Origin: Isurus oxyrinchus
Taxonomy: Eukaryota
Direction: 5' to 3'
NCBI GenBank assembly: GCA_026770705.1
Contig: JANJGN010000007.1
Location: forward strand, 108,686,001 to 108,750,000
DNA length: 64,000 nucleotides
The notes below the pieces were generated by a model. It saw only the letters and a program-made list of their open reading frames with translations, searched no databases and was not told the DNA's origin. The position numbers and the translations under genes were made by a program. Positions 4,809 to 44,499 of the stretch are shown here, piece after piece (position 1 is the first letter of the stretch; every line of letters begins with the position of its first letter).

Positions 4809-5129
4809 TATGCACAATTAGATGTAATCCGGTTCCATTTCCTCGAACTGCCTCCCGACGGATCACGGAGCAATAATAGATTCCAGAGTCTTGTAATGTC
4901 GCGTCCAGTAACTGAAAGAAATCACTCACTTGACTTTTCATACCAAATCTTCTTCTCTTGTCTGCGTTTCTGCCCAGGTATCTATTCTCGCCATGTTTCC
5001 ACCACAATACCCGTGCCCAGGCTTGGGCCTGAAGGATGGGGATCATGCAGTAGAATGTAATGTTCCCACCTCTGGATACAGTCGCTTTTTGTGGTGCTTG
5101 AGACACTTTAAACGAAGTGCGGCCCTCAG
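4809..5129 (-). CDS. V-set Ig domain exon with germline-encoded J-like strand (VJ type)
   Basis: Acceptor tttctgatag|CT, donor A|gtaagt, 321 nt, open. Encodes EGRTSFKVSQAPQKATVSRGGNITFYC...VLWWK...LQDSGIYYCSVIRREAVRGNGTGLHLIVH, with canonical C, W, DxGxYYC and GxGTxLxV. Confidence 0.92.
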
Positions 5130-12284: not shown

Positions 12285-14135
12285 TATACGGGGATGAAGT
12301 ATAAACGTAGGGAAGGCTTGCTATTACCGAACAAGGCGTTGGTGAGACAACATCTTGAGTGCTCCCTGCAGTTTTAGTCTGTTATTTACGGAGGGATATG
12401 CTTGCATTGGAGGAAGTTTAAAGAAGATACACTAGGTTGATTCCTGGGATAAAGCCGTTGTCTTATGAGGAAAGGTTGAACAGGTTGTGCCTCTACTCAT
12501 TGGAGTTCAGAAGTGATTTTGTTGAAACGAATAAGGTTCTCATGAGGCTTGAAAGGTTAGATTCTGGGACGATGTCTCTCTTCATGGAGGGATCCAGAAC
12601 TAAGTTTCCGAATCGGGGAAGTACCATTTAAGCGAGATGAAGAGTACTTTCTTTTCTCTGTAACCTTTGGAATTATTTACCGAGAGAACTGATCTGAGAG
12701 AGCCAGTATAGATTTGGAAAAGCCAAGTAAGCCTGGCGAACCTGATTGATTCTTTTGAAGAGGTGATTGAAGTAGTGGACAGGAAATGGCGATGGATGTT
12801 ATTGATATGGACTTCCAATAGGTTTGATAAATATTCTCATCAGAGATTTCATGTAAGATTTGAGCTGAGGGGGTTGAAGATAAATTATTGGCCTGGTTAG
12901 GAAATTGGCTGCCTGTAAAGAGACAGAGACATCATGAACAGGTACCTTGCTTGGCATGAACGGATGAGTGCTGTCCCGCAAGGATTTATGATGAGCCCTT
13001 CGCTATTCACCTATTTGCAATATTTTTAAGGACTTAGATGATGGTATAAACAACTGCATATCCAAGTTTGCTGATGACAAAAAGATAGATGGCTATGTAA
13101 GCAGTGTCGGTGGAAGCAAAAAAGTAGAAAGAGATATCAATAGATTAAGTGAACGGTCAAAGCTTGCCAAATGGATTTCAATGTAGAAAAATGTGGGTTC
13201 ATCCATTTTGCACCAAAAGTGGAACGGGTACAGTGATTTCTAAATGGCGAAAGGCTTGAAGCAGTGGAAGACCAAGAGGTCATAAAATGTCATGAACCGA
13301 TATAGAAAACATTCAAGAAATGGAATGTAATGCTAGCTTTTATATATAGAACAGTAGAATAAAAGGGGACAGGAGTTATACTTCAGATATGCAAAGACCT
13401 GGAGCGCACACCTGGTATACCGTGGGCATTTTGGCTTTACACCTTCGGCAGGGTTGCCCTTGGAGAGAAGGCAACACAGGTTTACCAGAATAATGTCTGG
13501 GTTTGTTGCGTTAAAATATCAAAAGAGATTACACAAATTAGGATTGTAATCCCTGGAATTTTTATAGTAATATGTGATTTGATCAGTATTTTCAAGATTT
13601 TAAGGGGAACAGAGAGAGAAGTTAGGGATAAATTATTTCTGGTGTGTTAGGAGACTAGCAGGAGGGGTCGCCATCTAACCATTAGAGCCAAAACTTTCAG
13701 ACGTGAAATTCTACCACAAAGAGCAGTAGAAATTTAGAACTCCGTTTCCCAAATGGCAGCTCACTTAGATCAATTCAGCTGGTCAGGCAGCATATATGAA
13801 CAGGGTCACAATAATCATTTATGGTCGAGATAGCCATATATTCTAATGTCATCTCGACCTGAAACATTAATTCTGTTTTTCTCCACGGGTGTTGCCCGAC
13901 CTGCAGAGTATTTTCTGCACATTATATTTTTATTTTAGCTTTGCAGCATCCACAATATTTTACTTTTGTACTCTAGGTTAATTGTTTATTTTAAATCTGA
14001 GACTGAGAGATTTTTGTTCACAAAAGCTGCGAAGGGATATGGAGTTAGCTGACAGATCATCCATGAGCTCATTGACTGGCAAGCTTGCTAGAGGAGATCA
14101 AAAACCTAAACTTGTTCCTATGTTGCTACATTCCT
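12285..14135 (+). mobile_element. Degenerate CR1 RT fragments (two pieces) with a ~200-bp Penelope-derived insert at ~13775-13970
   Basis: LSYEERLNRLCLYSLEFR; tccaagtttgctgatgac (SKFADD); tail gttcctatgtt. Confidence 0.8.
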
Positions 14136-14223
14136 AGGTTACACATCTCTCTGGGCGCAACTTAGAGCTGTAAGTGTTCCATTCTGTTTATGTGATGATG
14201 AATGGATTTGTTTCCGCTTTTAC

Positions 14224-14360
14224 CTACAGCACACCCTGTTCAGCATATTTGAAAAACCCTACTGCACGTACTGAATGCCGGTGCACCGCATACCAACCAA
14301 AGGCGCTCACCAGCGTAATGGCTATAAATACATATATCAAAATCCAGCGACTTGCATCTG
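14224..14360 (-). pseudogene. Orphan transmembrane-type exon (possible third IgSF receptor remnant)
   Basis: Acceptor ctcttcctacttatag|CAG (NAGNAG), phase 1. Encodes ADASRWILIYVFIAITLVSAFGWYAVHRHS. No partner Ig exon recognised nearby. Confidence 0.4.
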
Positions 14361-16321
14361 CTATAAGTAGGAAGAGTATGTTTGTCCGGCCCATGATTGT
14401 GCAAATCTGCTTCGGCTGTGATGTCAACATGTCGGATGCAATGACAGGCCTATCTCATCCCCATTTACCTTTTGGCCTTATTCCCTATGAACGTTTTTTG
14501 GGTGCCACGGAGACTTCCCTCCTCCACTGCCTGATCAGAACGCCCAGGTTACCTGAATTCACATGTACTGATCAGGTGGCTTCTGATAAATGATTGCAAT
14601 GTCAATCAGAGTTTAGCACTACCCCATTAGCAGTAACCGCCAATCAAATATCCTCATGTGTGTTTCAATTACACATGCACGTCCAGTGTGCGTAAAGCAG
14701 GCTTTTGGGGTCTGTGTACATGTATGTGTGACTTACATTGAACGTAATCAGAGGGCAAGGTTTAAATGATCAAAGAATTAGGTGCAAAAGCAGGTTTTTT
14801 GATGTGGAGATGGGCAAGCACGTAATTATAACATGAATAAGGATTTGCTTTCCGAGATAAATGAATAGTTGAATTTTTAGCTGTTGAATTTCAAAGAGAA
14901 AGAAAAGGATGTTTCTCAACTGGCAAAGGTCATAAATGAATAAGGCAAAGTTACTAAGTTTACTTTTTCCGAAATGGTGGCCATAAAGACAACAGGGAAT
15001 TCTTTTATATTTTGGGAAAGGAATCGTCCAAGGAAGGTTTAGAACGATGAGTTTATTGGTAAAAGAGAAAAAAACATATTTAAGGAAAGATTAAAAATGG
15101 TATGAGGTATGGCCATGTGATATTTTGAAGAGTGTGCTGGGTGAAGACAGACCTGTGAGGTAAGCAGCCTCTAGCCACCCCAGAGAAGTGTCTTCTTGTT
15201 TTGTTAAAAGCCTTGGATTTCCATTGTCGAGAGAGAGGGAGAAAGAACCCCAGTAGCAACAGTGAATGCCTTGTAGTAATATTACTGGATGTTTTATAGA
15301 TTAAGAATCGAAAGGGATTATTCCCTGGAAAAAGGTGTTTATTTGTGACCCCAGCTAAGTAGAAATCTTTTGGAAACGTTATAAGACTAAATTTAACTGT
15401 ACAACTGTAACCTTGTGATTTTAAGTTTTATTTTGTTTTTTTAAATCATTGCTCTCATTTAAAATCTCTAAATGTGCTAAGGGAAACTTTACTTCTTCAT
15501 TCAGTACACATACTATTTCGTAATAATAATGCAAATTGCAAATCGTTGTGATAGCTTGACCAAATTTCCCTTTGGATTTGGTCAGTCTGGCAATTACTAC
15601 CTGCCATATCATAGCACTTGTATCGTTTTGACAGGAGGCCCTGGAATACCTAATGCTCATAACATATTCCTGACCACAACTTCAGTTGTTTCTTAAAGAT
15701 ACATGCCAACTTTAAGGCTTCTTATAACTTATCCAAAAAATCACGAATTACTCCAATAATAGATACAAATTAAGAGTCTTCATCATTTATCTTATGCACA
15801 GTACAATTTGATGACTTACATGTTATTAATTACACAAATGTGACAACATGATGAAGCCCAATGCATATCTCGCCCCCCTGTGAATTAAATTGCTTGATAA
15901 AGGTAATATTGCTGATAGCAAAGCAGTGATTGCAGCACAATTTGACACGAATGCAAACGAGTAGGAGATAAATTTAAGGTTAATATCCGGAAGATTTATC
16001 TTCACAGAACAGTGGTCAACATATGGAAGGGACCACCAAGTAGATGAGCAGGGATGCAAAAACCCATGGAATAAATTCAGAAACATTTAGATATTCGATT
16101 TGGAGGGTAGGATCATCCAGGACGCAGGTCCCACTTTTATTTTCTCATCTGCATCTACCTTGCGCGCATGATTTCTGCTGCAAATTCTCTTGTTCATTTC
16201 ACAATATCCAAACCAAAATGTAAAAACAACCATTGGCCTGATGATAGTGAAAGTTTAGGCTAGTCTGCTTTAAATACAGAATTATCATTTGTACTTTTGC
16301 ATATATTATCAGCGCCATAAA

Positions 16322-16615
16322 CATAGAGTCATAGAGTTATATCGCGCAGAAACAGGCCCATCGACCCATCGTGCCCATGCGGGCCATCAAGCGCCTATCT
16401 ATTCTAATCCCATTTTCCACACACGTGGCCCGTAGTCCTCTATGTTGTGGCGTTTCAAAAGCTCATTTGAACACTCCTTAAATGTTCTGAGGGTTCCTGC
16501 CTCTAGCATGCCCTCAGACAGTGTGCTCCAGATTCCAACCACACTCTGGATGAAAAAAAGACCTCAAATCCCCTCTAAACCTCCTGTTCCTTAATTTAAA
16601 CATATGCCTCTTTGG
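16322..16615 (-). mobile_element. CR1 3' tail, same subfamily as 10085-10323
   Basis: catagagtcatagagttat..gaaacaggccc is the reverse complement of the CR1 terminus. Confidence 0.85.
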
Positions 16616-17506
16616 ATATAGTTATAGTTAAAACTATGGTCGTTGATGTTCAGTTAAAGCTTGTCATTTTTTTAATCACATATTTACTTTGGTTTACAGG
16701 CATGTAGCCAATTTGGAAAGCCGATTTAACGTAATTCTCAGGGCTAAAAATGAAATTAAGAGTTGAGATGCCTGTCAGTATTGATCTCCCGAAGCTCGTT
16801 CAATGAGTAAATATCGAATGCTATGTCAGATCTTTGGACAGTGCCGCATTTAAAAAAAAATATTGTCCCATGTTGTGGTACACATGTAAGCATCTGCTTT
16901 ATTTTTTCAACAATTAATAAATTTTAAGATCGCACTAAGATTTCCACGAAGTAATTCGAGTTCATCCTTTTCATTGCGGCTCCTTTATTTTAGCTAATGT
17001 AACAGCGATGCAGAAAGTATTGTGAGGGAAACAACACAAGAGACAAAAACAGTGATGGAAGTGAACTTGTAACATAACATAAATAAAATGGCATTTAAAT
17101 ACGTATCTATAGTGATTATGTCCTTGTTCCATGCATACCATCTTTATTTAATTGCTCCTTATTTAATGCGCCGTCGGCTACAAGTTAATGTTCTGGGGAT
17201 GTCCAGTTCATGTTCAGTGATGCCCGGCCTTCATGCTAGCACTGGTGACAGCACTTCATCGCTTCAACCCTACTGCCTGAAATTCCTCTCCGAAACAATT
17301 ATACATCTGCATTTCTCCAAGCTCAAGAAGGAGCCTCAGTGAAGCTAAATTTAATGTGGATCGGGGGAAATGTTTTCAGTGACTGTAGTCATACCTGGCA
17401 GGAAAATGATTATGTTTGTTTGATACCAACCCTCTCATTCCCTGGGTTGCAAGAGTTCCACGGGGTATTATTACCGGCCCAGCTCTCTTCATCTACATAA
17501 ACAATT

Positions 17507-17571
17507 GCGCTTGGCCTAAATAGCTTAAGTGGTTATGGTACTGGGCTTGAAACCCCCAGATCAAGAGTTCA
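17507..17571 (+). mobile_element. 5' half of a tRNA-headed SINE-like element (Tx1 target)
   Basis: A box TAGCTTAAGTGG (17521-17532), anticodon-like arm CTGGG..CCCAG, B box interrupted at GAGTTCA by Tx1. Preceded by TACATAAACAATT (17494-17506). Confidence 0.8.
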
Positions 17572-17639
17572 TCTTCTTAACGATCTTGTTGAGGCAATTG
17601 TGGATTCAGTTTGTTCCCTGATCCTGAGGAGAGAAGGTC

Positions 17640-17900
17640 TGTGGTGTTTTTGTTGCTGCTCCTCTTCAGTGTTTCAACTGTTTCTGCTGCTGCTTTTGGG
17701 GTTGTTGCTTCTGCTGCTGCCTTGCCCCTGTTTGGACCAAGAGGGAGAGAGGAACAACTGCTGCTGCTGCTTTGGGGTTGTTGCTTCTGCTGCTGTTGCT
17801 GCTTCTGCTGCTGCTCCTCCAGTGCTGCTGCTGCTGCTCCCTTGCCCTTGTGGTGCCAAAGGAGAGAGAGGGAGAGAAGAGAACAGTTGCTGCTATTGCT
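17640..17900 (+). repeat. (CTG/TTG)n-rich low-complexity tract with a duplicated subunit in the Tx1 5' UTR
   Basis: Runs of gctgctgct; ctgctgctgcttttggggttgttgcttctgctgctg and ccttgccc..gagaga..gaaca each occur twice. Confidence 0.85.
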
Positions 17901-18376
17901 ACAGGACAGGAAGGCCAGGAGGCCAGGACTGAGTTCAAAAACAACATCCTAGGTGGGTGTCTGAACTGTGTATTTTTGTTTAAGGTAGGGGCAATTAAGG
18001 ACTGTGTTTTGTAGGGGGAGGCAAGAAGACTGCCAGAGGGGTTGGGGAAGGAAGAGAGGGAGGGTGTGTGTGTGTGCTGAAACCATCTTTCTGCCACCCC
18101 TCCCCCAACCTAGCCCTTCCCGGTAAGGCCAGCAGTAGCTGGTGAAGACATCGCCTCCCCCTGCCTGAAGAACATCAGGCCCCCACACACCGTCCATCCA
18201 CCATCGAGGACACCCACCTGGACATTTACCTCTTTCCCTCCTGTGCCTCCCTGTCTTTTACTCCTCTCCCTCCTCTCCTCTCCTGCCTAAAAGAGGGGAG
18301 GTTGTTTCTACCTCTCTCCCCCACCCCCTTTCCTCCCCAGGGAGGAATACTAATATATATATATAAAAAAAACAAA

Positions 18377-20518
18377 ATGGCCAATCCTTCCCAGGGTGGG
18401 CGTGGCTCAGCACCTAAGGCCAATTCACCATCGCCTGTGGCCGGGCCCTCGAGGGCTAATGTGGAGGTGGTTTTGTCACCGGTGGCAGGGCCTCAAAAAA
18501 AGAAAACCTATGCGGGGGTGATTGCTTCTGCAGCACCAGCTGCTCCTGCTGCCCTGTCACCATTCCGCTTCCTTACCAGGGCCCTCGGGGTTAAGTGCTA
18601 CGCCCACCCGGAGATGACTATTGAGGCCTGCGTGAAGGCTATGGCTGGGGTTGTCGGCCCCTCAGCCGTTGTCGCGGCCTCAAAAATGTATGGGAGGGCC
18701 ATCTTTTTCTTGAGGTCCGAGCGGGCGGTGCAACTCGCCCTGCAGAAGGGGCTCACTGTGGGCGGGACTTTTCTGGCGGTGGACCCCCTTGAGGCCACCG
18801 CCCAGAAGATTGTTATTTCGAACGTCCCGCCCTTTATACCATGTGAGCTCCTCCTCCCCCACCTTAATAAGCTGGGGGAGGTCAGGTCAGGGGTTGCGCC
18901 AGTCCCGCTTGGCCTCAGAGACTCGACCCTCCGCCACGTGTACTCCTTCCGGCGCCAGGTTTTCATCCGTTTGGCCCGGGAGGAGTGCCTGGAGGGGGCT
19001 TTTGTTGTTAATTTTGAGGGGACCGCCTATCGGGTCTTCTGGACCACGGAGGGCGTGCGGTGCCATGCCTGTAAGGAGGCGGGGCACATAAGAAAGAACT
19101 GCCCCGCCTCCAAGGCCACGAGCCCCACCCAAGCGGCCACGGCTGGCACCGCCCCTCCTCCACCCGCCACCACTCCATCTCCCTCCCCGCAAGGGGAAGC
19201 GACCCCGGCAGCAGTTGCCATCTCGGTTGCCGGTGAGGCGGGGGGAGAGCCCCCGCGCCGTAAGAAGGCGCGGAGGAAGACCCGAAATTTGGAGGCGGTC
19301 CCTGAGACGCCCCAGACCCCTCAAACACATGGAAAAACCGGCTCAGGGGAGAAAACATCGTCCGGCCCCGGCATCGTGTCCGCGTGTGCTCCCGGGTCCG
19401 TGGGCACTAAGGCGCCAAGTGCTGGGCCCGGCGTCGTCCCTGCGCGTGCTCCCGGGGCCGGCGGGGAAAAGACGCGGGACCCCGAGCCGAAAGAAAAATT
19501 GAAAACCCAGAGGGTGGAGTGTCCGGGAGGGCTGGGAAAGGAGGAGGGGGCCTCGGAAATGGAGGTCTCCCTAGCCCCCAGCCTGACCCGGAAGAGGCGT
19601 CACACTTTGGAGGAGGAAGTGGGCGATGCCCAAACTGACGAAGTTGGGTGTGTCCCTTCCCCTGATGAAGAGGTGGTGGCGTCTCCACCCAGTAAAACCT
19701 CGCCCTGCCCTCTGTGGGAACCCAAAACTCCTGCACCTACTCCCACCACTGTTCCCCCCGTCAACCTGCTGCAGTCCCCTGAACAGGGCCCCTCGGGGGT
19801 CGCTGAGGGCACCTCCCTTGAGGTGGTGTCCGACTCCAGGGAACTTAATACCCCGGAGGTACTTTCTAGCTCGTCGGGGGATTGCAGGTTTGAAATAGTA
19901 AAGAATATAAATGGGTCATTGGGTGGCGGCGAAAAGGAGGGCCTTCCCGCTCCCTCCCTAACCTTGACACCGGGCATCCTATGTTTAGGTCAGGAGCTTG
20001 TCCTGAGCTCCCCGGACGACCCGGTGCCGGGAGGAGAGCGGGCATCAGAACTGCCGCTGCCCTCTGGCCTAAAAAGTTTCGAGGAGACCAGAGAGGACTC
20101 CTCTGGCCTTGATCCTGGGGGTGGGATCGAGGCTGAGATAGAGCCAGCTGGCAGCTCTGAATCAGCCCCCGTACTCAATGCGGGGGAGGGGTCGGAAGCT
20201 GGAGGCGACAACCCGGAAGAGGACGGGGTGTCGGTGGTGAGCGCTGGGGATTACGCGGAGTCACTCTCAGGCGAGGCGGTGGATCCCCTGGTGCCCTCCA
20301 CTGACTCCCCCCTCATCCCCCCAAGGGAACTCCGGGACTTTTTGTCGGGGAACCGCGGTCGCCGAGACAGGGTTCAGTTGGCCTTGGACCGGTGGCATTC
20401 ATTTCCGCTGGTGTTCTGGTCCACTCGCGAGGCTCTCAAGTCTCCTGAGTTGGATAGGAACGCGCAGCGGAGGGTCCAAATGTTTCTCGCTGGGCTCCTG
20501 AAGGAGAGGAAGGACTAA
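18377..20518 (+). CDS. Tx1 ORF1 protein (713 aa): N-terminal RNA-binding region, CCHC zinc knuckle, long Pro/Ser/Glu-rich tail
   Basis: Open from aaaATGG (MANPSQGG). Contains AASKMYGRAIFFL, ISNVPPFIP, RHVYSFRRQV and CHACKEAGHIRKNC, typical of Tx1 ORF1. Confidence 0.92.
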   Translation: MANPSQGGRGSAPKANSPSPVAGPSRANVEVVLSPVAGPQKKKTYAGVIASAAPAAPAALSPFRFLTRALGVKCYAHPEMTIEACVKAMAGVVGPSAVVAASKMYGRAIFFLRSERAVQLALQKGLTVGGTFLAVDPLEATAQKIVISNVPPFIPCELLLPHLNKLGEVRSGVAPVPLGLRDSTLRHVYSFRRQVFIRLAREECLEGAFVVNFEGTAYRVFWTTEGVRCHACKEAGHIRKNCPASKATSPTQAATAGTAPPPPATTPSPSPQGEATPAAVAISVAGEAGGEPPRRKKARRKTRNLEAVPETPQTPQTHGKTGSGEKTSSGPGIVSACAPGSVGTKAPSAGPGVVPARAPGAGGEKTRDPEPKEKLKTQRVECPGGLGKEEGASEMEVSLAPSLTRKRRHTLEEEVGDAQTDEVGCVPSPDEEVVASPPSKTSPCPLWEPKTPAPTPTTVPPVNLLQSPEQGPSGVAEGTSLEVVSDSRELNTPEVLSSSSGDCRFEIVKNINGSLGGGEKEGLPAPSLTLTPGILCLGQELVLSSPDDPVPGGERASELPLPSGLKSFEETREDSSGLDPGGGIEAEIEPAGSSESAPVLNAGEGSEAGGDNPEEDGVSVVSAGDYAESLSGEAVDPLVPSTDSPLIPPRELRDFLSGNRGRRDRVQLALDRWHSFPLVFWSTREALKSPELDRNAQRRVQMFLAGLLKERKD

Positions 20519-20574
20519 AAAGTCCTCTTCTTCTTTTTAATTACTTAAGGTGAAGGTTTGATGTACCTTTGACA

Positions 20575-23500
20575 ATGAAGACGACTATAGCCAGCCTCAA
20601 CATCCGCGGCAGCAGGGGCGCACAGCGCAGGTTCCAGAACTTCTCGGTCCTCAGGGACGGGAAGTATGCGTTGTGCCTCCTGCAAGAAACCCATACTGTT
20701 CCGGGAGACGAAGCCACGTGGCTCCTGGAGTGGCGAGGGGGGATCTACATGAGTCACCTAGCCTCCAATTCTGGCGGGGTGGCTATCTTGTTGGCCCCAC
20801 ATTTTCAGCCGGAGATCTTGGGGGTCAAGGAGCTGGTGCCAGGCCGGTTGCTGCACCTGACTGTGCGTCTGGGGGGGGGCGGTGCTTCACTTCGTGAATG
20901 TATACGCTCCCCTGGGCACGCAGCAGCAAGCGAGCTTCTTTGAAGAAGTGTCCACTCATCTCGGCTCCATCGACGTTGGCGAGTGCATCGTCCTCGGGGG
21001 AGATTTCAACTGCACCCTCGGGGTCCGGGACTGTCACGGTACCCCGCACTGCACGCGAGGTGTGAGTAAGTTGCGGGACCTGGTCAGGTCCTTCGACTTA
21101 GTGGACGTCTGGCAAAATCTCCATCCTGACTCCAGCGTGTTCACCTTTGTGTCACCTGGAGTCGGAGCGTCCAGACTCGACCGCCTTTAAGTTTCAAAGG
21201 CGTACGTGTCCTGCGTTCCGGCTGCCTCTATACGGCAGGTTCCGTGCACGGACCACCGTCTGGTGTGGGCGGAGCTCACTTCGTTCTGCGCTCGGACGGG
21301 GTCCGCGTACTGGCATTTTAATAACCTGTTGTTGGAAGACCAGCGGTTCCTGGACTCGTTCCGTCGTTTCTGGGCCGGCTGGAGAAGGAAGCAGGGAGGC
21401 TTCCCCTCCTTGAGGCTATGGTGGGACGTGGGCAAGACTCACGTCCGAGTTTTCTGTCAAGAGTACGCGAAGGGGTCGACAAAGAGACGCAAATCCAGGG
21501 TCGAGGAGTTGGAGAAGGAGGTGCTCGACCTGGAGGCACGTCTCCATCAGCCTGATGCGGACCCGGCCCTGCGGTCGGTGTACGATGAGAAGAAGGGCGC
21601 GCTGCGGGACCTGCAATTGGTCGGGTCTCGGGGCGCGTTCGTGAGGTCGCGGATCCGGTTCCTCAGGGAGATGGACCGTGGCTCCCCCTTCTTCTACTCG
21701 CTGGAAAAAAGGCACGGGGTCCGTCAGCAGCTCTTTATGCTGCTGGCCGACGACGGATCCCTTGTCTCAGATCTGGAGGGCATCAGGGCCATCGCCCGAG
21801 ATTACTACACTGCCCTGTTCTCTCCGGATCCGTCTAGCGAGGACGCTTGCAGAGTTTTGTGGGAGGACCTGCTGCAGGTCAGCCCGGAGTGCGCCGGAAG
21901 GCTTGACTCCCCTATAAGTCTGGGGGAGCTGACCGGCGCACTCGACGGTCTTTCTAGGGGCAAATCCCCGGGACTAGACGGGCTGACCGTGGAGTTCTTC
22001 AGGGCGTTCTGGGACGTCTTGGGGAGCGACTTCGCGGGGGTCCTGGGGGAGAGTATCGCTACCGGGGAGATGCCCCTTTCGTGGCGCAGGGCCGTGATTG
22101 CCCTGCTGCCGAAGAAGGGGGATCTCCGCCTTCTTAAAAACTGGTGCCCGGTCTCCCTCCTCAGCACGGACTACAAAATCTTCGCCCGAGCCATGTCTTC
22201 CCGGCTCGGCACCGTGCTGGACCACATGATCCACCCTGACCAGTCCTACACCGTCCCGGACCGAACCATTTATGATAATATCCATCTGGTCCGGGACATC
22301 ATCCACTATTCCCAGAGGGCTGGTCTGTCGAGCGCCTTCCTGTCTCTCGATCAGGAGAAGGCGTTCGACAGGGTGGATCACGGATACTTACTCGGAACTC
22401 TGCGAGCGTTCGGGTTCGGGACGCATTTTGTCGCCCAGATCCGACTTTTGTATACCGCCGCGGAGTGTCTAGTGAAGGTTAACGGGTCCCTGACGGCGCC
22501 CCTTCGCTTTGGGAGAGGGGTACGTCAGGGCTGCCCCCTGTCTGGCCAGTTGTATTCTATTTGCGTGGAGCCTTTCCTGCGCCTCTTGCGGAGGAGGTTG
22601 CCGGGATTGGTCCTGCGCGGGCCGGGCATCGGGGTGGTCCTTTCGGCTTACGCCGATGACGTGCTCCTTATATTTAGTGACCCGGCTGACCTGCAGAGGA
22701 TGCGCGAGTGCCAGGAGGTCTACTCTGCCGCTTCTTCTGCCAGGATCAACTGCGGTAAATGTTCTGGACTCCTGGTCGGTCAGTGGCAGATGGATCCCCT
22801 ACCCGAGGAGCTCAGGTCTTTCACCTGGAGCAGGACCAGCCTCCTCTACCTGGGGGTCCATCTCTGCCCCGCTGAGGAATCCTGGCCGGCAAACTGGCAG
22901 GAACTGGAGACGAAAGTCACCGCTCACCTGCGGCGCTGGACAGGACTGCTCCGAGTGCTATCTTATCGAGGTCGAGTTCTGGTCATAAACCAGCTGATCA
23001 CCGCCATGTTGTGGTATCGGCTGGTCACTTTGACCCCTCCCCTGGACTTTGTCACAAGAATCCAGAGATTGTTAGTCGACTTCTTCTGGGACAAAAGATT
23101 GCACTGGGTCGCTGCCGAGGTTCTGAGTCTCCTGCTTAGGGAGGGCAGTCAGGCGCTAGTGTGCCTACGCACACAGGTGGCGACTTTCCGCCTTCAGACC
23201 CTGCAGCGATACCTCTACATTGAGCCTCCTCCTAGATGGTGTGCCCTGATGACGTATTTCTTCCATCAGGTGCACGGCCTGAATTATGACGTGCAGCTCC
23301 TGTTTATAGAACAGCTGGGCCTCGGTGGCTCCTTGCAGGCGTTGCCCATCTTTTACCAGGACCTGATCAAAGTCTGGAAAGTGGTCGCCTCACGACGCAG
23401 CTCTCCCCCGTCAGGAGTAGCGGCTATCGTCAGAGAGCCACTGCTCAGGAATCCGCCCCTCCGTCCCTTTCAGTGGTTGGCGGAGAGGAGGGCTGTGGCC

Positions 23501-24466
23501 GCAGGGGTGACCAGGATCGGGGACGTGCTGGGTGGTGGAGGACTGGGCTGGATGCTCCTGCAGGAGTTGGCGCGACGCGCGTCTGTGAGTGTCCAGGTCG
23601 CAGCCGATGCCATCCAAGACCTGAGAACGGTCGTGTTCGGACCCGACGTTATTTTGGGTCTTGAGGTGGTCCAGGTGCGCGGTGGTCTTCCGTCTGAACG
23701 TTCCCCTGTTCGGACAGAATTCCACATTGGCCCCAAGCCCCGAACCCTCCCTAGGGTGCTGGGGCCCCGCAATATGAGCCGCCTCGGGGACATGCCCTCC
23801 GTGCCTTTTAGCACAGCAAAGAGAGGCTTTTTGTACAGACTGCTGCTGCACACCTTCCATTTTCTAGCCCTTGTCCGCCGCCCGGACATGCCCTGGCGTG
23901 CCTTGTTGCCGTCCGGCGGTGGAGGCCCCCGATGGGAGGCCCTCTATGGAGGTGTCCTCCCCCTTTCTATCGGGGACCTGGGTTGGAGGGTGTTGCATGC
24001 AGCAGTCCCCTATAATAAGAGGATGCATAGGTTCACGGACTCTCAGGACACGTGCCCTTTTTGCGGTCTTGTGGAGTCCGTGGACCATGTATACATAGGG
24101 TGTTGTAGGCTGCACTCCCTTTTTAGTTATTTGAAAAACCTTTTATTGATGTTTTGTTTGCACTTCAGCCCCACGCTCCTGATCTATGGGCACCCGGTGC
24201 GGAAGGGGGTCGGGAAGGAGGAGGACCTCCTCGTGAACCTGCTCCTGGGCCTGGCCAAGTTGGCCATTAAAAGGTCCAGGCGGCGGGCGATCGACGGGGG
24301 AGTCCCGCCCGATTGTTTGTCCCTCTTCCGCGGCTACGTTCGCTGCCGGATGTCCCTGGAGAGGGAGCACGCGGTGTCTGCTGGCAGTCTCGAGGCCTTC
24401 CGTGCTCGGTGGGCACCGCGGGGACTGGGGTGTTTTGTTGACCCCTTTAATCACATTTTGATTTAA
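20575..24466 (+). pseudogene. Tx1 ORF2 (APE endonuclease, reverse transcriptase, C-terminal zinc finger), ~1296 aa when repaired
   Basis: APE motifs LQETH, GGDFN, RLDR, TDH. RT motifs LDQEKAFD, RQGCPLSG, AYADDV. Zinc finger CPFC..ESVDHVYIGC. +1 frameshift in the G9 run at 20871-20879 and TAA at 21188-21190; the remaining 1086 codons are open. Confidence 0.93.
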
Positions 24467-24575
24467 AGTTTGTAAGTTTCCTTTAAACTTTGTTCTTGGT
24501 TTTACAGCTGACCTGAATTAGGGGCTGTGCCTGATTTATCCCGATTTTGTTGATTTGGTTTTCATTTAAAAGATT

Positions 24576-24748
24576 ATCAAGAGTTCAAATCTCACAATGG
24601 CAAACTATGAAACACTAACTTCATCTGAAACAGATGGGAACGGGTTTGTACTCGAAAGAAATCAAGAGTTCAAATCTCACAATGGCAAGCTATGAAACAA
24701 TGTAACTTCATCTGAAACAGATGGAAACAGGTTTGTACTCGAAAGAGT
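24576..24748 (+). mobile_element. Two tandem copies of the SINE 3' half (24576-24660 and 24661-24748)
   Basis: Both begin ATCAAGAGTTCAAATCTCACAATGGCA (B box) and end GTTTGTACTCGAAAGA. They differ by ~4 substitutions and a 2-nt indel. Followed by TACATAAACAATT (24749-24761). Confidence 0.88.
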
Positions 24749-26429
24749 TACATAAACAATTATGTTCTCCGCATTATCAGGTCAGCAGTGGGACTGCTTG
24801 CCAATGATTGCACAGTGATCAGTTTTACTTGCAATTTCTCAAGTGTAGTTCATGTCTGCACATGCAAGATCTTGGACAATATCTAAGATTTGGCCGATAA
24901 TTTACAAGATTCATGCCATACAAGATCCAGGTAATCACCATCTCCAATATAATGGAGCCTAGCCAGTTCTCTTTGACTGGTAACCGAATTACAGTTGCAA
25001 AATTCACCACCGTCTTTGATCTGGAGGTAACCAGTGATTGCAACATGAACTGGAACAGCCATAATTGCTGTGGCCACGAAAGCATGTCAGAGACTGAGTA
25101 TTGTGCAGTGCCTAGCTCACCTCACGACTCCCCAAAGCTTCTATACCACTAAAAGGTGCAAGTCAGGAGCGTGATGGAAAATCCCCCACTTTTCTGGAAA
25201 GGTGCATCTGCAACAACATTGCAAAAATATACTTGGAGCTGTTCAAGAGACAGTTTGATTGAGCTCTGTATAACCTACTGGACTAAATATCTAACTTGAA
25301 ATAATTATCTCCAGGCGATAGTTATGAAGAAGTTTGAAAGCTTCAGATGTGTAGTACAAAGCACTTATATTAAAATGGAAACTGCAGCTGTTTTCCTTTT
25401 TGATGGATTGCAGTTAATTAAAACAATACAGCGAAGTATATTCTGACGTTTAACGCTTTCGCCGCAGGAAGAGCAGTTAAAATGAAAGTTTATTCTGGTA
25501 TCCTCTAATGGGAACTTCTGCTTTATCATAAAATCTCTTGAGAAGGAGCTGCTGTGCAATTTTTTTATTATTCGTTCTTCGCTAGTAAAGCCAACATGAT
25601 TTACACATGGCTAGTTTCCTGACAATGTGATGGTGCGTCTTTTTGAACCACTGGAATAGTAAATAGAAAATGGGACAATACCAAAATCAGCAGTTGTTGG
25701 CAGGCAGGTGAATTGCACCCATGTGACAAGGAGCCACTAGAAATGTAATGGGGCAATCTTCAATTTCCACTTGAGAAAGGGAAATATCTTTAGGCTCAGG
25801 CCTCATGCCAGTGGTGAGCTGCAGGTACCAAACAGTAAAATTGCTGCAGCTCGCCAGTTGCAAAACGGTAGGAAATCGGCCAGTTCCTATGCTAAGCACG
25901 AAGAGGTGAAGAAAATCTCAGGGGCCAGAGGTTGGTACTCACATAGCCAGACAAGGAACAGAATACTTTGGGTACAGGAAGTGCAAGCCTACTCTTCATG
26001 GGCTCACAAAAATAAAGATTAGAGATTTGTTGCATCGCATTTTCAGTGGCCTCCAATGGATAGTTAAAGGTTGGTCAACACATATAATGTGCATGTAGAG
26101 TGTCAGTGATGCCACACAATCAATTGCCTCACAAAATTACAACTGGGATTTTCAGTTTGGTGCAGGACCTTACTTCGCAAAGTCAGGAAACCTCTGAAAA
26201 CAGACAAGGCACCTGCTCAGCCATTTACAAGCCTACCTGAAAATTGAATCAGTTGCTGGTGTGCCTCTCGCAATTTCCATGTGAGAAACAGGCAGCTGAA
26301 AACCATTCCCAATATTTACACATGGGCAAAGCATAAGCACTTTTACACTAACACCAGCAGCTCTAATGTTGGAACTCGAAGCCTTTGCAAGTAACAAATG
26401 AATAGCTGCTAGGTAGGCAGTTGGGTTAT

Positions 26430-27478
26430 ACCTATCACCAAGAAAGATGCTTGTCCTTGTTGGAGATCAATCATCTCAGTTCCAGGACATCACTGCAGGA
26501 CTTCCTTAGGGTAGTGTCCTGGGACCAACCATCTTCAGCTGCTTCAGCAATTACCTTCCTTCCATCATAAGGTCAAAAATGGGGATTTTTGTTGATTGTT
26601 GTACAACGTTCAGCAGCACTCGCTACTCGTGAGATACTGAAACAGTGCATGCCCAAATGCAACAAGTCTTGGACAATATCCAGGCTTGGGCTGACAAGTG
26701 GCAAGTAACATTCGTGCCACACAAGTACCAGGCAATGACCATCTTCAACAATACAGAATCTATTTCCCCTTGACATTCAATGGCATTACCATTGCTGAAT
26801 CCCCCAATATTAACATCCTTTGGGTTTCTATTGATCATAAACTGAACTGGACTAGCCATATAAGTACTGTGACTACATCAGCATGTTGGAGGCTAGGAAT
26901 CCTGCGGTGAGTAACTCACCTTCTGACTCCTTAAAGTGAGCCCACATTCTACAAGGCACAGGTCATGAGTGTGATGGAATACTCCCCACTTGCCTGGATG
27001 TTTGCAACTCAAACAACACTCAAGATGCTTGACAGCATCCAGGACAATGCATCCCGCTTGAATGGCACTCCATACGCAAACATTCACTCCCTCCACAAAT
27101 GGAACAAGATGGCAGCAGTGTGAGCCATTCACAAGATACAATGCAGGAATTCACTGAGCCTCCATTGACAGTACTTTCCAAGTCCATCATCGCTGTTAAT
27201 TAGGACAAGTGCATGGGAACATGGAAACACCACACTTTTAGTCTCCCCTCCAAGCCAGTCACCACCCTGACTTTGAAATAAATCACCATTCCTTCACTAT
27301 TGCTAGGTCAAAATCCTGGAAATCCCTACCTAACAGCACTGTGGGTGTGCCTACATATCATGAACTGCAGCAGTTCAAGAAGGCAGGTCACCACCCCCTT
27401 CTCAAGAGCAATTCGGGATGGGCAATATATGCTGGCCTAGCTAGTAACACCCACATCCTTTGAATTAATTTTAAAAAT
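26430..27478 (+). mobile_element. LINE family B 3' fragment
   Basis: Colinear with 7240-8236; tail ctcaagagcaattcgggatgggcaatatatgctggcctagc. Confidence 0.88.
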
Positions 27479-28728
27479 GACAATCTACAGGCAGAAATTT
27501 AAGCCCCTCTACTGGCGGCTTAGCAGGCGAGGTTTGGCATGTAAAATTCCCTGGATGGCCTGTCTATCACCCTGACCTGTCCACCATTTTACAAGGTTGG
27601 TTAAGGCCTAAGCTATACCAGCCACCTTTGCTGCAATTGATTCCTAAGTGTGCAATTAATGACCTCTTATGGGCCATTTCCCACTAAGCCTCAATTTTGA
27701 GGCTAGCAGGAGGAACTCAGGGACAGGAGGGATGCCAGGCACGCCACCCTGCTCAGACATCTGGTGGGAAGGGGGAAGTGCCTCCTTCAACAGCCTCCTT
27801 TCCACATCAGGCCCTCCCCCTTGCCCTATGCCAAGGTTTGCCCACTGCTCTCTCACCGTTCTGGCATCTCCATTAAGACACCTACGTATCTCTCCCCAAT
27901 GCTCCAGGCCTCACCTCTCCAACCTGCTGTAACCAACTGTCCAGTATTTTAAGGGGCTGTCCCTTATTTTGTCTGTTTATCCCATGTCCCTTAAGGAACA
28001 CATTTTGTCCTTTAAATCTAGGATAGCCTGTGAGTTACTCAACCTGGGGATCTCCTCTTTGCCTGTCAGTTTTCTTCTCTGAGCATACGCCCATCACTGC
28101 CCACACCCTGCCTGCGTTCTTATGGTGACCAGAAGCCCCCACCCCAAGTCCTCAGATTCAAAGAGTACCTTAATTTATTTCATAAGATTTATCACATTGA
28201 CATGTAACCAAATACATTTACCTGGCCCTAGATTCCAGGGCCAGAATTTTCCCATTGGCATGCAGGGGGCAGGCCCCATATGACCACGTGTAAAATGATG
28301 AGTGGTCAAGTCGGGAGAGAATTCAGACGTCACCATGCGCCATCTCGATATCTCATTGGGCGGGCGCCTTCCGATGTGTGTCCGCCATTAATTATAGGGT
28401 CAATTTAGGCCCTTGAACTGTGAATGGACGGTGATTTTTCCGTGCCCGTGGAATCTTTGGGTCGGCGCATGGGCGCAATGCATTGGCCGGTAGGACCCAT
28501 TTGTAGAAACCTTATCCACGTGCGGGATAAGAGGGTTCAGTTGGGTCGCAAGTGTGCTCTGTCAAATATTGGTTTTTCAAAGTTACTGATATTTTCTAGT
28601 GTGATCTGCAATACCTCAATACACATACCAGCTGCTTTGTCTGGACTCATAACCTTCATGTCAGCACTCTGTCATGTGGAATCATTTTTGGGCCTGCAGG
28701 TTTCAGGGAGCCTTCTGTTAGCTTGTGA

Positions 28729-29800
28729 ATGGGAGCTGAACTCTGCACTGGAGTCACCTTCTTTGAGGAGGAAAGGAGGGCTAGAAGGGGGAAGAGGCCC
28801 AGAGTGTACATTCAGACTCCAGCAGAGCCTCCTTTGGGAGGATAGGTGCAGGCACAAGGGGTGCAGGACCAAGAAGTAGTCCAAGGCGGAAGGGGCCGCA
28901 GAAAATGCCACCATCCTGCTGCCAGGTTATACAGGCAGTGAAGCAGCTACGTCAATATGTCTGAGGTGCAGTGCTGAAGGAGGCTCTGTCCCTCAAGGCA
29001 GACAGTCAACTATATCTGTTAGATTATTGGGCCTGAGATCCCCATGAATTGTGTGGGTGAACACCTCATGCCAGTGGCTCTAAAGGTCACAACTGCCCTG
29101 AACTTCTATGCCTGTGTCTCCTTCCAGGAGTTGGCAGGTGATCTTTGCGGTGTCTCCTAATCAGCTGTCCACACTTCTGTTTAGGGGGTTGCTCACGCTC
29201 TGTTCAGGCGAGCATTGACCTTCATCCAATATCTCCAGGACCAGGTCAGCCAGAGGCTTGTCGGCGATTGCTTGGTTCTCCCGCATTCAGGGTGCAACAG
29301 ACTGAGCACATGTGTCCATCAAGGCACCAGCTGGTGAGCCCAGTGACTTCGTGAAAAGAAAGGGCTCCCCCTCCATGAACATGCAGCTCATGTGTGATCA
29401 CAGGATGCTGATTCTAGAAGTCTGTCCAAGACACCCAGGCATCTCCCATAATGTCTACATCCTTAGACACTCCCAGGTGTTAGGTTTCTTCAGTGCTCCA
29501 GCCCGGCTTGATGGATGCCTCCGGTGCCTGGGCTGTTGAGGGGGCCCACTCCAGTACCCCCCAGATCGACTGTCGCTGATAGTGGTTGCATGCTGCAATC
29601 TCCAAAATCTTGCGCTGGAAATGGGGGACACTGTGGACGATGAAGACATAGAGGGTGTGGCTGCACGATGTGTCCAGTAGTGAGTCCGAGGATGATCAGG
29701 CACAGGGATGTGCTGATGGGGGACACATTGACTCAGGCATACAGCATGGAGGCAGGGACCACAGGGAGGCTTTAATCCTACGACCCATCAACCAGCAAAC
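28729..29800 (+). pseudogene. Harbinger (HARBI1-like) DDE transposase, disrupted and internally deleted
   Basis: MPVALKVTTALNFYA..FQ..GDLCGVS; HVSIKAP..FVKRKGSPSMNMQLMCDHRMLILEVCPRHPGISHNVYILRHSQV; multiple stops and frameshifts. Confidence 0.85.
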
Positions 29801-30149
29801 CACGTATTGACCTCCAGGACAAGTCTGGGCTGCAGGCTCCATACTCGATACCTAAGTGCAAAATCTGCTTGATTAGGGACATTAACTAAGGGCCTTGTTA
29901 ATAGAGCTGAATGTCCCACAAAACACTCATAGCATTTTTAGACACCATCCACCTGTGGAAAAAAAGGTACCCTCAGCCGTGGTTACGTGTCTGAATTTAA
30001 CAGTACAACCAAAGGAATGTAACAAAACAAAATGACAGAGATGTTAAAATTCACACCAACTCCTAAGGACCTCATTGTTGGCCCACGCATAAACACCAGT
30101 GATAAAATCTTGGTGTACCGAAGGTGACATTTGTTTATGTTTTCGGGTG

Positions 30150-35165: not shown

Positions 35166-35727
35166 GTGTCCTCGTAGGTCCTCACATCGCAGTCGTGAAT
35201 GTTTGACTCCAGTCTATCTTTTTGCAGCGCCAATACCCTCAATGAGAATGCTCTTGTCATGGAAATGAGTGAAGGCCCTAATTGTCGCTCGATCGCAGGG
35301 GGATAATGACAACATGCATTGAGGACATTCCTTAGATCTTCACATGGCCTCTGAGAATGTCTGACTCCTGTCTAGCCAAGAGCAGCTCACTTGCACTCCA
35401 TGATCAGGAACAAATAAGACTTGGCTTGCACAGAGTGAGAGGAGAAAATGTGGCTGTCATTGGTGAAATAGATGAAGAAACAGATTCTGCAAGAGATTTG
35501 GGAAATATCAGAGCTGAACCTTGAAATTCTGTGGTACACTGAACCACGAAAGGACTTTATGAATGCATGGGTGTTATTGAGGAGAGTGGGAAACTTTTAC
35601 GGCAGTGCATGTAGGAAATTTGATGTCCGAAGGATGAAATAATATTTCTGATTTGAATATTTTTATGCCTTTGTAGTTTTGAATATGTGCATAAATATTT
35701 TTTAAAACTTGAGCAAAATGTTTAATT

Positions 35728-37447: not shown

Positions 37448-37450
37448 AAT

Positions 37451-44495: not shown

Positions 44496-44499
44496 AGTG

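What the first reader, a model, noticed from the sequence alone, without database searches (positions are those of the whole stretch)
17494..24761. Young Tx1 retrotransposon inserted into the B box of a small tRNA-headed SINE: a candidate SINE-targeting element
Seen: nested structure of old LINE > [TACATAAACAATT] SINE 5' half [ATCAAGAGTTCA] Tx1 [ATCAAGAGTTCA] SINE 3' half [ATCAAGAGTTCA] SINE 3' half [TACATAAACAATT], with all repeats perfect. Known: Tx1-clade elements are often sequence-specific (Keno in U2 snRNA, Mutsu in 5S rDNA, Dewa in tRNA arrays, Xenopus Tx1L in the Tx1D transposon). Inference: this family uses a dispersed ~140-nt tRNA-derived element as its landing pad. If the extra 3' half came from a donor locus, the donor was inserted at the identical nucleotide, giving two independent observations of the same target from one locus.
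Basis: partly seen in the sequence, partly recalled or inferred. Interest (0 to 1): 0.85.

Follow-up and report, generated by a model that had tools for sequence, protein, structure and literature searches.

The report
Tx1 retrotransposon lodged in a SINE
A nearly intact 7-kb Tx1-type jumping gene sits at one exact nucleotide inside a small tRNA-derived repeat, and indirect genome-wide evidence suggests this very abundant Tx1 family uses that repeat as its regular landing site, a new target for a kind of site-specific element that is already known.

Summary
All five repeats are exact and none is expected by chance. The 7004 bases between them are a Tx1-clade LINE with an intact ORF1 and an ORF2 50% identical to Xenopus Tx1L. 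ORF2 carries one frameshift and one in-frame stop.

The SINE-homing reading is partly supported. Contigs of two related organisms show four things:
- The Tx1 3' kilobase and the SINE are each present in roughly 10^4-10^5 copies.
- Uninterrupted SINEs exist.
- SINE 3' ends run into diverse flanks.
- No comparable set of diverse flanks was listed behind the Tx1 3' end.

Many other contigs join a SINE tail directly to ATCAAGAGTTCA. The same nick site therefore seems to have been reused many times.

Tandem 3' halves are common genome-wide, so it may predate the Tx1.

Verdict: probably (~0.65) a new SINE-targeting member of the known target-specific Tx1 group. Interest is moderate. Other first-reader notes in this genome mention related Tx1/SINE pairs, all unchecked.

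The parts
17494..17506 (+). Left copy of the outer direct repeat TACATAAACAATT, the target-site duplication of the SINE insertion
   Evidence: Exact; 2 copies in the window against 0.01 expected
17507..17571 (+). SINE 5' half: tRNA-like head with A-box-like TAGCTTAAGTGG, an anticodon-arm remnant and the first part of the B box. It ends with copy 1 of ATCAAGAGTTCA (17560-17571)
   Evidence: 17530-17559 matches 27/30 the consensus that precedes ATCAAGAGTTCA in uninterrupted SINE contigs (table 7)
17572..18376 (+). Tx1 5' UTR, with CTG-rich internal repeats at 17640-17850
   Evidence: lies upstream of the first ATG of ORF1
18377..20518 (+). Tx1 ORF1, 713 codons, open; weak CCHC zinc knuckle
   Evidence: zf-CCHC 17.5 bits, below the 20.8 cut-off
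20575..24466 (+). Tx1 ORF2 (APE endonuclease, reverse transcriptase, C-terminal zinc-binding region). Broken by one frameshift in or next to the G run at 20871-20880 and one in-frame TAA at 21188-21190
   Evidence: RVT_1 8.7e-35; Exo_endo_phos and zf-RVT weak. tblastn of Xenopus Tx1L ORF2 covers residues 1-1291 in two frames. 50% identity over 99% of the 1086-aa piece
24467..24575 (+). Tx1 3' UTR, ending ..TTTAAAAGATT with no poly(A)
   Evidence: No variant letters were listed for 24499-24575 in either run (table 3; 11 rows hidden)
24576..24660 (+). First SINE 3' half. It begins with copy 2 of ATCAAGAGTTCA and ends ..CTCGAAAGAA. It is either a 3' transduction from a donor locus or the first unit of a SINE that was already dimeric
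   Evidence: 93% identical to 24661-24748. Contigs bridging 24660|24661 are high-copy (table 4)
24661..24748 (+). Resident SINE 3' half. It begins with copy 3 of ATCAAGAGTTCA, has a hairpin at ~24709-24726 and the tail ..ACTCGAAAGAGT (other copies align on to ~24752)
   Evidence: table 7. The tail resembles the 3' end of the older Tx1 copy at 37390-37449 (16/18, 8 of 2000 shuffles)
24749..24761 (+). Right copy of the outer direct repeat TACATAAACAATT
   Evidence: Single-copy flank begins after 24765 (summed depth falls from ~1.5 million to ~40, table 2)

Best explanation
A tRNA-Thr-like SINE of about 141 nt inserted long ago into a decayed LINE and made the outer duplication. Later a Tx1-clade LINE inserted into it by target-primed reverse transcription. 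The inferred steps are these. The element's APE endonuclease nicked the bottom strand opposite CCCAG|ATCAAG, at the boundary between the anticodon stem and the variable loop of the tRNA-like head. It nicked the top strand 12 bp further on, at GTTCA|AATCTC in the T-loop (B box). That produced the 12-bp duplication. I read this Tx1 family as sequence-specific for that SINE site. This would let it reach roughly 10^4 copies while landing in a dispensable repeat of roughly 10^5 copies. The extra 3' half has two possible origins. Either the Tx1 transcript read through into the SINE tail of its donor, whose terminal motif (AAAGAK) resembles that of the Tx1, or the target SINE was already dimeric. Shown here: the anatomy, clade membership, high copy numbers, existence of empty SINEs, and recurrence of the 'tail|ATCAAGAGTTCA' junction. 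Inferred: endonuclease specificity, the order of nicks, and read-through.
For: The repeats are exact and non-random. tRNA-derived sequence runs continuously across the reconstituted junction, with the B-box-like GAGTTCA|AATCTC, so the uninterrupted SINE is the ancestral state. ORF2 is 50% identical to Xenopus Tx1L over its whole length, and many Tx1-clade retrotransposons show target sequence preference (PMC4494074; PMC6719617). In one search the summed contig depth of the Tx1 3' kilobase is ~0.8-1.0 million against ~40 in the unique flank, and the SINE reaches 1.5-5.8 million. Loose ends before 24576 and 24661 read as the SINE 5' half (30+17 contigs in X1, 31+31 in X6), so empty SINEs exist. 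Loose ends behind the SINE end are many and diverse (93+32 and 47+15 contigs, agreement 0.34-0.40). No loose end behind 24575 is among the six best-supported rows of either run, whose weakest rows have 11 and 3 contigs. If Tx1 flanks were unrelated, scaling by depth would predict about 70 and 35. SINE tails joined directly to ATCAAGAGTTCA recur with different upstream letters: 21 contigs ACTCAAAAAAGT|ATCAAGAGTTCAA in X6, 11 contigs in X1, joints 24734>24568, 24753>24568 and 24716>24576, and bridging depth at 24660 of 1.16 million in X1 and 95 thousand in X6. One joint puts a 5'-truncated Tx1 after Tx1-end+ATCA (24579>24420). This copy differs from near-universal family letters at only 2 of 626 positions (24282, 24387). 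Its SINE 5' half differs at 3 of 30 from the empty-SINE consensus. Organism B has the SINE end plus flank at the same site (record 16). The Tx1 therefore looks younger than the SINE insertion.
Against: No second copy of this Tx1 subfamily could be read with its flanks. 719 loose-end rows and 90 joint rows were hidden and the ranking rule is not stated, so the absence of diverse flanks behind 24575 is indirect. Summed contig depths are not copy numbers. The recurring tail|ATCAAGAGTTCA junction could be largely inherited from a multimeric SINE master rather than made by repeated insertion. Two X6 joints (24753>24344, 24755>24473) place 5'-truncated Tx1 directly after a SINE 3' end, not at the T-loop site. 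The tail of this SINE copy is not significantly similar to the young Tx1 tail beyond the terminal motif. It resembles the older Tx1 family instead.
Confidence: 0.65

Rival explanations
1. Chance hit. This Tx1 family has no preference for the SINE, or has a different target, and one of its many copies happened to land in a SINE.
For: Only one filled site was read directly. The family is very abundant, so some copies must fall in SINEs by chance.
Against: The SINE occupies roughly 0.4% of the genome. This is a rough estimate from about 10^5 copies of 140 bp (depths) in a genome of about 3.5 Gb (taken from the run's contig total). The insertion point also coincides to the nucleotide with the boundary at which SINE tails are joined to ATCAAGAGTTCA elsewhere in the genome (tables 5, 5c, 7). 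No well-supported diverse flanks were listed behind the Tx1 3' end although they were for the SINE end (table 7). Many Tx1-clade retrotransposons show target sequence preference (PMC4494074).
Confidence: 0.17
2. Composite unit. After one founding insertion, SINE 5' half + Tx1 + SINE 3' half(s) became the transposing unit, or the Tx1 adopted the SINE 3' half as its own tail. Tx1 copies would then always be SINE-flanked without the SINE being a target, and the outer 13-mer would be the composite's duplication.
For: It would also explain the lack of diverse flanks directly behind 24575 and the high depth of the 24660|24661 junction in X1. The SINE tail carries a Tx1-lineage terminal motif. Other notes in this genome describe LINEs with tRNA-like heads (unchecked).
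Against: A 7-kb transcript from the SINE's Pol III promoter is implausible, because T runs begin about 75 nt into the Tx1 (17645-17649). The outer unit starts exactly at the tRNA-like +1 position. The SINE 5' half here is about 10% from the empty-SINE consensus while the Tx1 is about 0.3% from its family letters. The SINE end plus flank is shared with organism B, about 3% diverged (record 16, tables 3, 7). The perfect 12-bp duplication on both sides of the Tx1 body still requires an insertion into a SINE.
Confidence: 0.08
3. A sub-question about the extra 3' half. It was already there: the target was a SINE with a tandem (dimeric) 3' half, and the Tx1 entered at the first unit. The locus would then give one observation of the target, not two.
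For: Tandem 3' halves joined at the same nucleotide are common genome-wide (tables 4, 5, 5c, 7). Other first-reader notes describe tRNA-Thr SINE multimers (unchecked). The 7% difference between the halves fits two old units.
Against: The first half ends at a SINE-type terminus (..CGAAAGAA), as expected for a read-through transcript. Its 2-nt deletion at 24615 is shared by contigs summing to about 31 thousand depth in X1 (table 4). That would fit a transduced tail inherited by progeny of one master, though a SINE subfamily explains it equally well.
Confidence: 0.5

Closest known systems
Xenopus laevis Tx1L (type element of the Tx1 clade), which inserts at one site in the Tx1D DNA transposon
   Same: Two ORFs, APE+RT ORF2 (50% amino-acid identity over the full length), about 7 kb, no poly(A). 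It sits precisely inside another dispersed repeat with a target duplication. It is a case of a TE homing into a TE (PMC4494074, PMC6719617).
   Different: The proposed target here is a tRNA-derived SINE, a retroposon, not a DNA transposon. The apparent copy number is far higher. Endonuclease specificity was shown biochemically for Tx1L (Christensen et al. 2000, cited in PMC4494074) but not here.
Crocodilian Tx1-Mar families and their SINEU passengers, which target Mariner-N4_AMi (Kojima 2015, PMC4494074)
   Same: Tx1 families prefer a high-copy non-autonomous repeat. SINEs share the target preference and are inferred to be mobilised by the same Tx1. Stacked insertions occur.
   Different: There the SINE is only a passenger and the target is a Mariner MITE. 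Here the SINE itself would be the target and perhaps also a passenger. SINEU heads are snRNA-derived, whereas this head is tRNA-like.
Keno (U2), Mutsu (5S rDNA), Dewa (tRNA-Leu spacer), Kibi and Koshi (microsatellites): target-specific Tx1-group LINEs of fish (Kojima and Fujiwara 2004, as cited in PMC4494074 and PMC3706591)
   Same: Same clade-level strategy of homing to multicopy, conserved, dispensable sequence. A Pol III-type sequence serves as the target.
   Different: Only about 36-38% amino-acid identity to fish 'pol-like' Tx1 proteins. Their targets are genes, spacers or microsatellites, not a retroposed SINE. Which named family each hit belongs to could not be established.
The older Tx1 family in the same window (35.7-44.5 kb), stacked head to tail beside a Harbinger transposase remnant
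   Same: About 75% nucleotide identity to the young element. It shows precise stacking that suggests site-specific reinsertion. Its terminal region resembles the SINE tail.
   Different: It has a different flank, following ..AAAATGTTTAA downstream of a DDE_Tnp_4 ORF, and no SINE sequence nearby. It is much more decayed.

Membership tests
Tx1 clade of L1-superfamily non-LTR retrotransposons | ORF2 with an N-terminal APE endonuclease followed by a reverse transcriptase and a C-terminal zinc-binding region | tested here: met
   RVT_1 120.7 bits. Exo_endo_phos (17.3 bits) and zf-RVT (21.3 bits) fall below their cut-offs on the fragments. The whole of Tx1L ORF2, residues 1-1291, aligns.
Tx1 clade of L1-superfamily non-LTR retrotransposons | RT/ORF2 groups with Tx1L rather than with other L1 lineages | tested here: inconclusive
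   The best named full-length hit is YTX2_XENLA (50% identity, 99% coverage). All top hits are Tx1-type. No tree with L1 outgroups was built.
Tx1 clade of L1-superfamily non-LTR retrotransposons | ORF1 with a CCHC zinc knuckle | tested here: inconclusive
   zf-CCHC 17.5 bits against a 20.8 cut-off at residues 253-268 of the 738-aa ORF.
Sequence-specific (target-homing) LINE | Most independent copies are flanked by the same target sequence at the same nucleotide | tested here: inconclusive
   Indirect only. No well-supported diverse loose ends lie behind 24575, whereas the SINE end has 62-125 such contigs. The boundary |ATCAAGAGTTCA recurs. Flanks of individual copies could not be fetched.
Sequence-specific (target-homing) LINE | A precise junction with a defined target-site duplication | tested here: met
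   A perfect 12-bp duplication on both sides of the 7004-bp element, at this one locus.
Sequence-specific (target-homing) LINE | The element's endonuclease nicks the target sequence specifically | not testable with these tools
   This needs a biochemical assay.
tRNA-derived SINE (SINE2) | tRNA-like head with internal Pol III A and B boxes | tested here: inconclusive
   A-box-like and B-box-like motifs are readable. ARAGORN draws a cloverleaf only at a relaxed threshold and finds nothing at default settings on the interrupted copy. Rfam gives no significant tRNA match on the halves. The Thr(UGU) assignment rests on reading TTTGTAA in the consensus loop and on my recollection of tRNA-Thr.
tRNA-derived SINE (SINE2) | It exists as independent dispersed copies with their own target duplications | tested here: met
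   The outer 13-mer duplication. Contigs join the 5' half directly to the 3' half, and the 3' flanks are diverse (agreement 0.34-0.40) in two organisms (table 7).
tRNA-derived SINE (SINE2) | The 3' tail is shared with a partner LINE | tested here: inconclusive
   The tail matches the 3' end of older Tx1 copy A at 16/18 (8 of 2000 shuffles). It matches copy B more weakly and the young Tx1 not at all beyond the terminal AAAGAK motif.
LINE 3' transduction | Extra non-element sequence lies between the canonical 3' end and the downstream target duplication and derives from the donor's flank | tested here: inconclusive
   The 85-bp first 3' half lies in exactly that position. A SINE that was already dimeric explains it equally well.

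The most novel reading that the evidence does not exclude
A reciprocal LINE-SINE loop. The tRNA-Thr-like SINE would be both the landing pad and a passenger of the Tx1 lineage. The Tx1 endonuclease would nick one site in the SINE's tRNA-like head. Tx1 transcripts that read through into the SINE tail, and SINE RNAs themselves (same AAAGAK terminus), would both be reverse-transcribed at that nick. This would produce filled SINEs, stacked Tx1s and the abundant tandem 3'-half multimers. It would allow a strictly site-specific LINE to reach about 10^4 copies because its passenger keeps making new targets.
Probability: 0.3. Interest if true: 0.72.

Novelty: new member of a known kind. Interest (0 to 1): 0.5.

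Why it matters
Site-specific LINEs are usually held to low copy numbers by the scarcity of their targets (rDNA, snRNA genes, one DNA-transposon family). A Tx1 family that homes to a SINE with about 10^5 copies would show how a specific endonuclease can combine 'safe-haven' insertion with very high copy number. It would also add retroposed SINEs to the list of Tx1 targets. I found no such case in the held literature. If the SINE is also mobilised by the same lineage, the pair would be a self-reinforcing target-and-passenger system. That would explain the tandem SINE multimers that puzzled other readers of this genome. A 12-bp-staggered, sequence-specific APE endonuclease is also of practical interest for targeted insertion tools.

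Tried and rejected
- Fetching other copies through proteins: the search for homologous proteins with the 1086-aa ORF2 piece gave nothing above about 64% identity, so no copies from this genome are in that collection.
- A metagenome scan for the last 19 nt of the Tx1 gave 42 loci, none with any further similarity to 17400-24900. These were chance matches.
- No ORF spans either Tx1/SINE junction, so junction peptides could not be searched.
- The raw-read runs X21 and X22 laid no reads at all, which is no test.
- The search of earlier findings by sequence and by several word sets returned nothing.
- In-situ tandem duplication of the 3' half after Tx1 insertion is rejected. The halves differ by 7%, while this Tx1 copy differs from near-universal family letters at 2 of 626 positions and all five flanking repeats are perfect.
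- 'SINE = deletion derivative of a tRNA-headed LINE' is rejected. The tRNA-like T-arm is continuous only in the uninterrupted SINE, and the Tx1 body is bracketed by a 12-bp duplication.
- An RT stop at a modified T-loop base (m1A58) as the origin of the multimers is rejected. The unit boundary lies about 13 nt upstream, at the junction of anticodon stem and variable loop.
- Tail-to-target microhomology priming is rejected. The observed junctions keep both the full tail and the full ATCAAGAGTTCA.
- tblastn of all Tx1-type hits against the flanks 12000-17493 and 24762-35700 found nothing. The host 'old LINE' is therefore not Tx1-like, and its identity rests on a motif read by eye.
The reconstituted SINE was built only inside scripts from the window file.


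Full report
**1. Observation**

- ATCAAGAGTTCA occurs exactly three times in the window, at 17560, 24576 and 24661. No shuffle produced any.
- TACATAAACAATT occurs exactly twice, at 17494 and 24749.
- The order is: 13-mer, 65 nt of tRNA-like sequence ending in the 12-mer, a 7004-bp GC-rich block (60% GC against about 40% around it), the 12-mer plus 73 nt, the 12-mer plus 76 nt, then the 13-mer.
- The two 3' halves are 93% identical with a 2-nt indel.

**2. What the 7-kb block is**

It has an open ORF1 (18377-20518) with a weak CCHC knuckle. ORF2 has a strong reverse-transcriptase match (RVT_1, 8.7e-35) and weaker endonuclease and zf-RVT matches.

The best named full-length relative is the Xenopus laevis Tx1 149-kDa protein, at 50% identity over 99% of the 1086-aa piece. 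A sea-turtle cluster is equally similar, and fish 'pol-like' Tx1 proteins are at 36-38%.

tblastn of the Xenopus protein covers its residues 1-106 in one frame (20575-20892) and 100-1291 in the next (20873-24445). ORF2 therefore has a single frameshift in or next to the G run at 20871-20880. It also has one in-frame TAA at 21188-21190, because the ORFs 20882-21190 and 21206-24466 share a frame.

The element is a Tx1-clade LINE that is nearly intact. I did not attempt any repair of the frame.

**3. What the small element is**

Joining 17507-17571 to 24673-24748 was done only inside a script. It gives a 141-nt unit with an A-box-like TAGCTTAAGTGG, a B-box-like GAGTTCAAATCTC, a hairpin and a short stem in its tail.
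- ARAGORN finds nothing at default settings on the interrupted copy and draws a cloverleaf only at a relaxed threshold.
- Rfam gives nothing significant on the halves.
- The consensus of uninterrupted copies recovered from other contigs reads ..ACTGGGTTTGTAACCCCAAG before the 12-mer. Its loop TTTGTAA suggests a Thr(UGU) origin. That assignment is my reading, not a test.

The Tx1 body splits the T-loop between GAGTTCA and AATCTC. The left edge of the 12-mer lies at the boundary between the anticodon stem and the variable loop. The tRNA-like sequence is continuous only when the Tx1 is removed, so the SINE is ancestral and the Tx1 is the insert.

With one copy of the 13-mer removed, the flanks outside it read as one decayed RT motif (GPALFIYINN / YVLRIIRSAVGLLANDCTVIS). 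The 'old LINE' host is plausible, but it was not confirmed by Pfam and it is not Tx1-like.

**4. Evidence from other copies**

I laid 23950-24950 on contigs of organism A (X1) and organism B (X6). Two raw-read runs of other organisms gave no reads. The results were as follows.

(a) *Copy number.* About 21,750 and 14,400 contig pieces matched at 90% or better. Summed depth is 0.8-1.0 million over the Tx1 3' kilobase and 1.5-5.8 million over the SINE. It falls to about 40 after 24765. These sums are not copy numbers, but they indicate roughly 10^4 Tx1 3' ends and roughly 10^5 SINE 3' halves.

(b) *Empty SINEs exist.* Loose ends lying before 24576 and before 24661 have the consensus TGGTTATGGTACTGGGTTTGTAACCCCAAG, with agreement of 0.78-0.97. 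This matches 17530-17559 at 27 of 30 positions.

(c) *Flanks of the SINE and of the Tx1.* Behind the SINE end (24751-24753), 125 contigs in X1 and 62 in X6 run into unrelated sequence (agreement 0.34-0.40), so the SINE is dispersed. No loose end behind 24575, the Tx1 terminus, appears among the six best-supported rows of either run. The weakest rows shown have 11 contigs (X1) and 3 (X6). If Tx1 flanks were unrelated, scaling by depth would predict about 70 and 35. This is indirect, because 719 rows were hidden and the ranking rule is not stated.

(d) *A recurring junction.* SINE tails are joined directly to ATCAAGAGTTCA in many contigs, with different upstream letters:
- 21 contigs in X6 read ACTCAAAAAAGT|ATCAAGAGTTCAA.
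- 11 contigs in X1 read ..GGGTTTGTGCTCG and continue at 24569.
- Joints run 24734>24568 (summed depth 862), 24753>24568 and 24716>24576.

Contigs bridging 24660|24661 sum to 1.16 million in X1 and 95 thousand in X6. The boundary 'an inserted 3' end, then ATCAAGAGTTCA' is therefore high-copy and variable upstream. That is what repeated priming at one bottom-strand nick would leave. One joint (24579>24420) shows a 5'-truncated Tx1 behind Tx1-end+ATCA, which suggests stacking at the same site.

(e) *Relative ages.* This Tx1 copy departs from near-universal family letters only at 24282 and 24387, out of 626 positions. Organism B carries the SINE end and flank at the same site, with 7 mismatches and a 10-nt gap in 207 nt (record 16). 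The SINE insertion therefore seems older than the Tx1 insertion, although the small numbers leave this open.

**5. Consequence for the extra 3' half**

An in-situ duplication after Tx1 arrival is excluded. The halves differ by 7%, while this Tx1 copy differs from near-universal family letters at 2 of 626 positions and all flanking repeats are perfect.

However, tandem 3' halves are common genome-wide (point 4d). Other first-reader notes in this genome also describe tRNA-Thr SINE multimers (unchecked). The target may simply have been a dimeric SINE. I put the two readings at about even odds.

Either way, the multimers point to repeated use of the same nick site. The alternative is that they descend from one multimeric master.

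**6. SINE tail and Tx1 tails**

The resident tail TTGTACTCGAAAGAGTTA matches the 3' end of an older Tx1 copy in the window (37390-37449) at 16 of 18 positions (8 of 2000 shuffles). It matches copy B more weakly. It does not match the young Tx1 beyond the terminal AAAGAK motif, where the young Tx1 ends AAAAGATT.

The SINE is therefore probably a passenger of the Tx1 lineage. Partnership with the young family specifically is not shown.

**7. Context in the window**

Three older Tx1-like pieces, about 75% identical to the young one, lie head to tail at 35.7-44.5 kb. The stack starts right after ..AAAATGTTTAA, about 1 kb downstream of an ORF with a Harbinger-type DDE_Tnp_4 match (34317-34685, 7.7e-07).

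This agrees with unchecked notes elsewhere in the genome about a Harbinger-targeting Tx1. It shows that a sister family behaves site-specifically here.

**8. Mechanism proposed**

This is the established target-primed reverse transcription model for APE LINEs, applied to the anatomy.
- The bottom strand is nicked opposite CCCAG|ATCAAG.
- cDNA synthesis starts from the Tx1 RNA terminus, or from a read-through terminus at the SINE tail.
- The top strand is nicked 12 bp downstream at GTTCA|AATCTC.
- The result is a 12-bp duplication.

Specificity is assigned to the endonuclease by analogy with Tx1L (Christensen et al. 2000, cited in PMC4494074). This step is inferred.

**9. Comparison with the literature**

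Tx1-clade targets listed in the literature are:
- the Tx1D DNA transposon;
- Mariner-N4_AMi, with SINEU passengers;
- LTR elements;
- microsatellites;
- U2, U5 and 5S genes;
- satellites;
- the tRNA-Leu spacer.

The sources are PMC4494074, PMC3706591 and PMC6719617. My searches of the held library found no Tx1 or other LINE reported to home into a SINE. Repbase and Dfam could not be consulted.

**10. Verdict**

SINE-homing is likely but not demonstrated (0.65). The 'two observations from one locus' argument is weakened. I class this as a new member, with a new target class, of the known target-specific Tx1 group. Interest is moderate.

**Limits**
- Read laying and the look-up of sequencing runs were single-use, so the 5' junction and the orthologous empty site were not examined.
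- The organism was not identified.

Noticed in passing
window 35728-44497: Three older Tx1-like pieces (about 75% identical to the young element) lie head to tail in the same orientation. The first two begin at the same internal position (equivalent to about 5020-5060 of the young element), which looks like a defined short derivative rather than random 5' truncation. The stack starts right after ..AAAATGTTTAA.
   Followed up: partly
window 34317-34685 (+): An ORF with a Harbinger/PIF-type DDE_Tnp_4 match (7.7e-07) lies about 1 kb upstream of the older Tx1 stack. This is consistent with other notes in this genome about a Harbinger-targeting Tx1 family.
   Followed up: partly
window 24709-24752 versus 37390-37449 and 39320-39379: The SINE's terminal ~18 nt (TTGTACTCGAAAGAGTTA) resemble the 3' termini of the older Tx1 copies (TTGACTCAAAAGTGTTA and TTGACTCCAAACAAGTTA). 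The SINE is probably a passenger of that Tx1 lineage.
   Followed up: partly
window 24576-24748, and contigs of runs X1 and X6: Tandem multimers of the SINE 3' half, joined tail-to-ATCAAGAGTTCA with variable filler letters, are abundant genome-wide in two related organisms. Truncated units also occur (24604>24660 with ACTATG between, in both runs).
   Followed up: partly
window 24698-24731: The hairpin part of the SINE tail (TTCATCTGAAACAGATGGAA) has the highest summed depth of the stretch (5.8 million in X1, 2.6 million in X6). It may be shared with further repeat families.
   Followed up: no
window 20871-20880: The only frameshift of ORF2 lies in or next to a run of nine or ten G. Whether it is a real mutation or a homopolymer assembly error was not tested.
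   Followed up: no
window 17640-17850: The Tx1 5' UTR contains imperfect CTG/CTGCTGCTG-rich repeats of about 24-36 nt. Their function is unknown.
   Followed up: no
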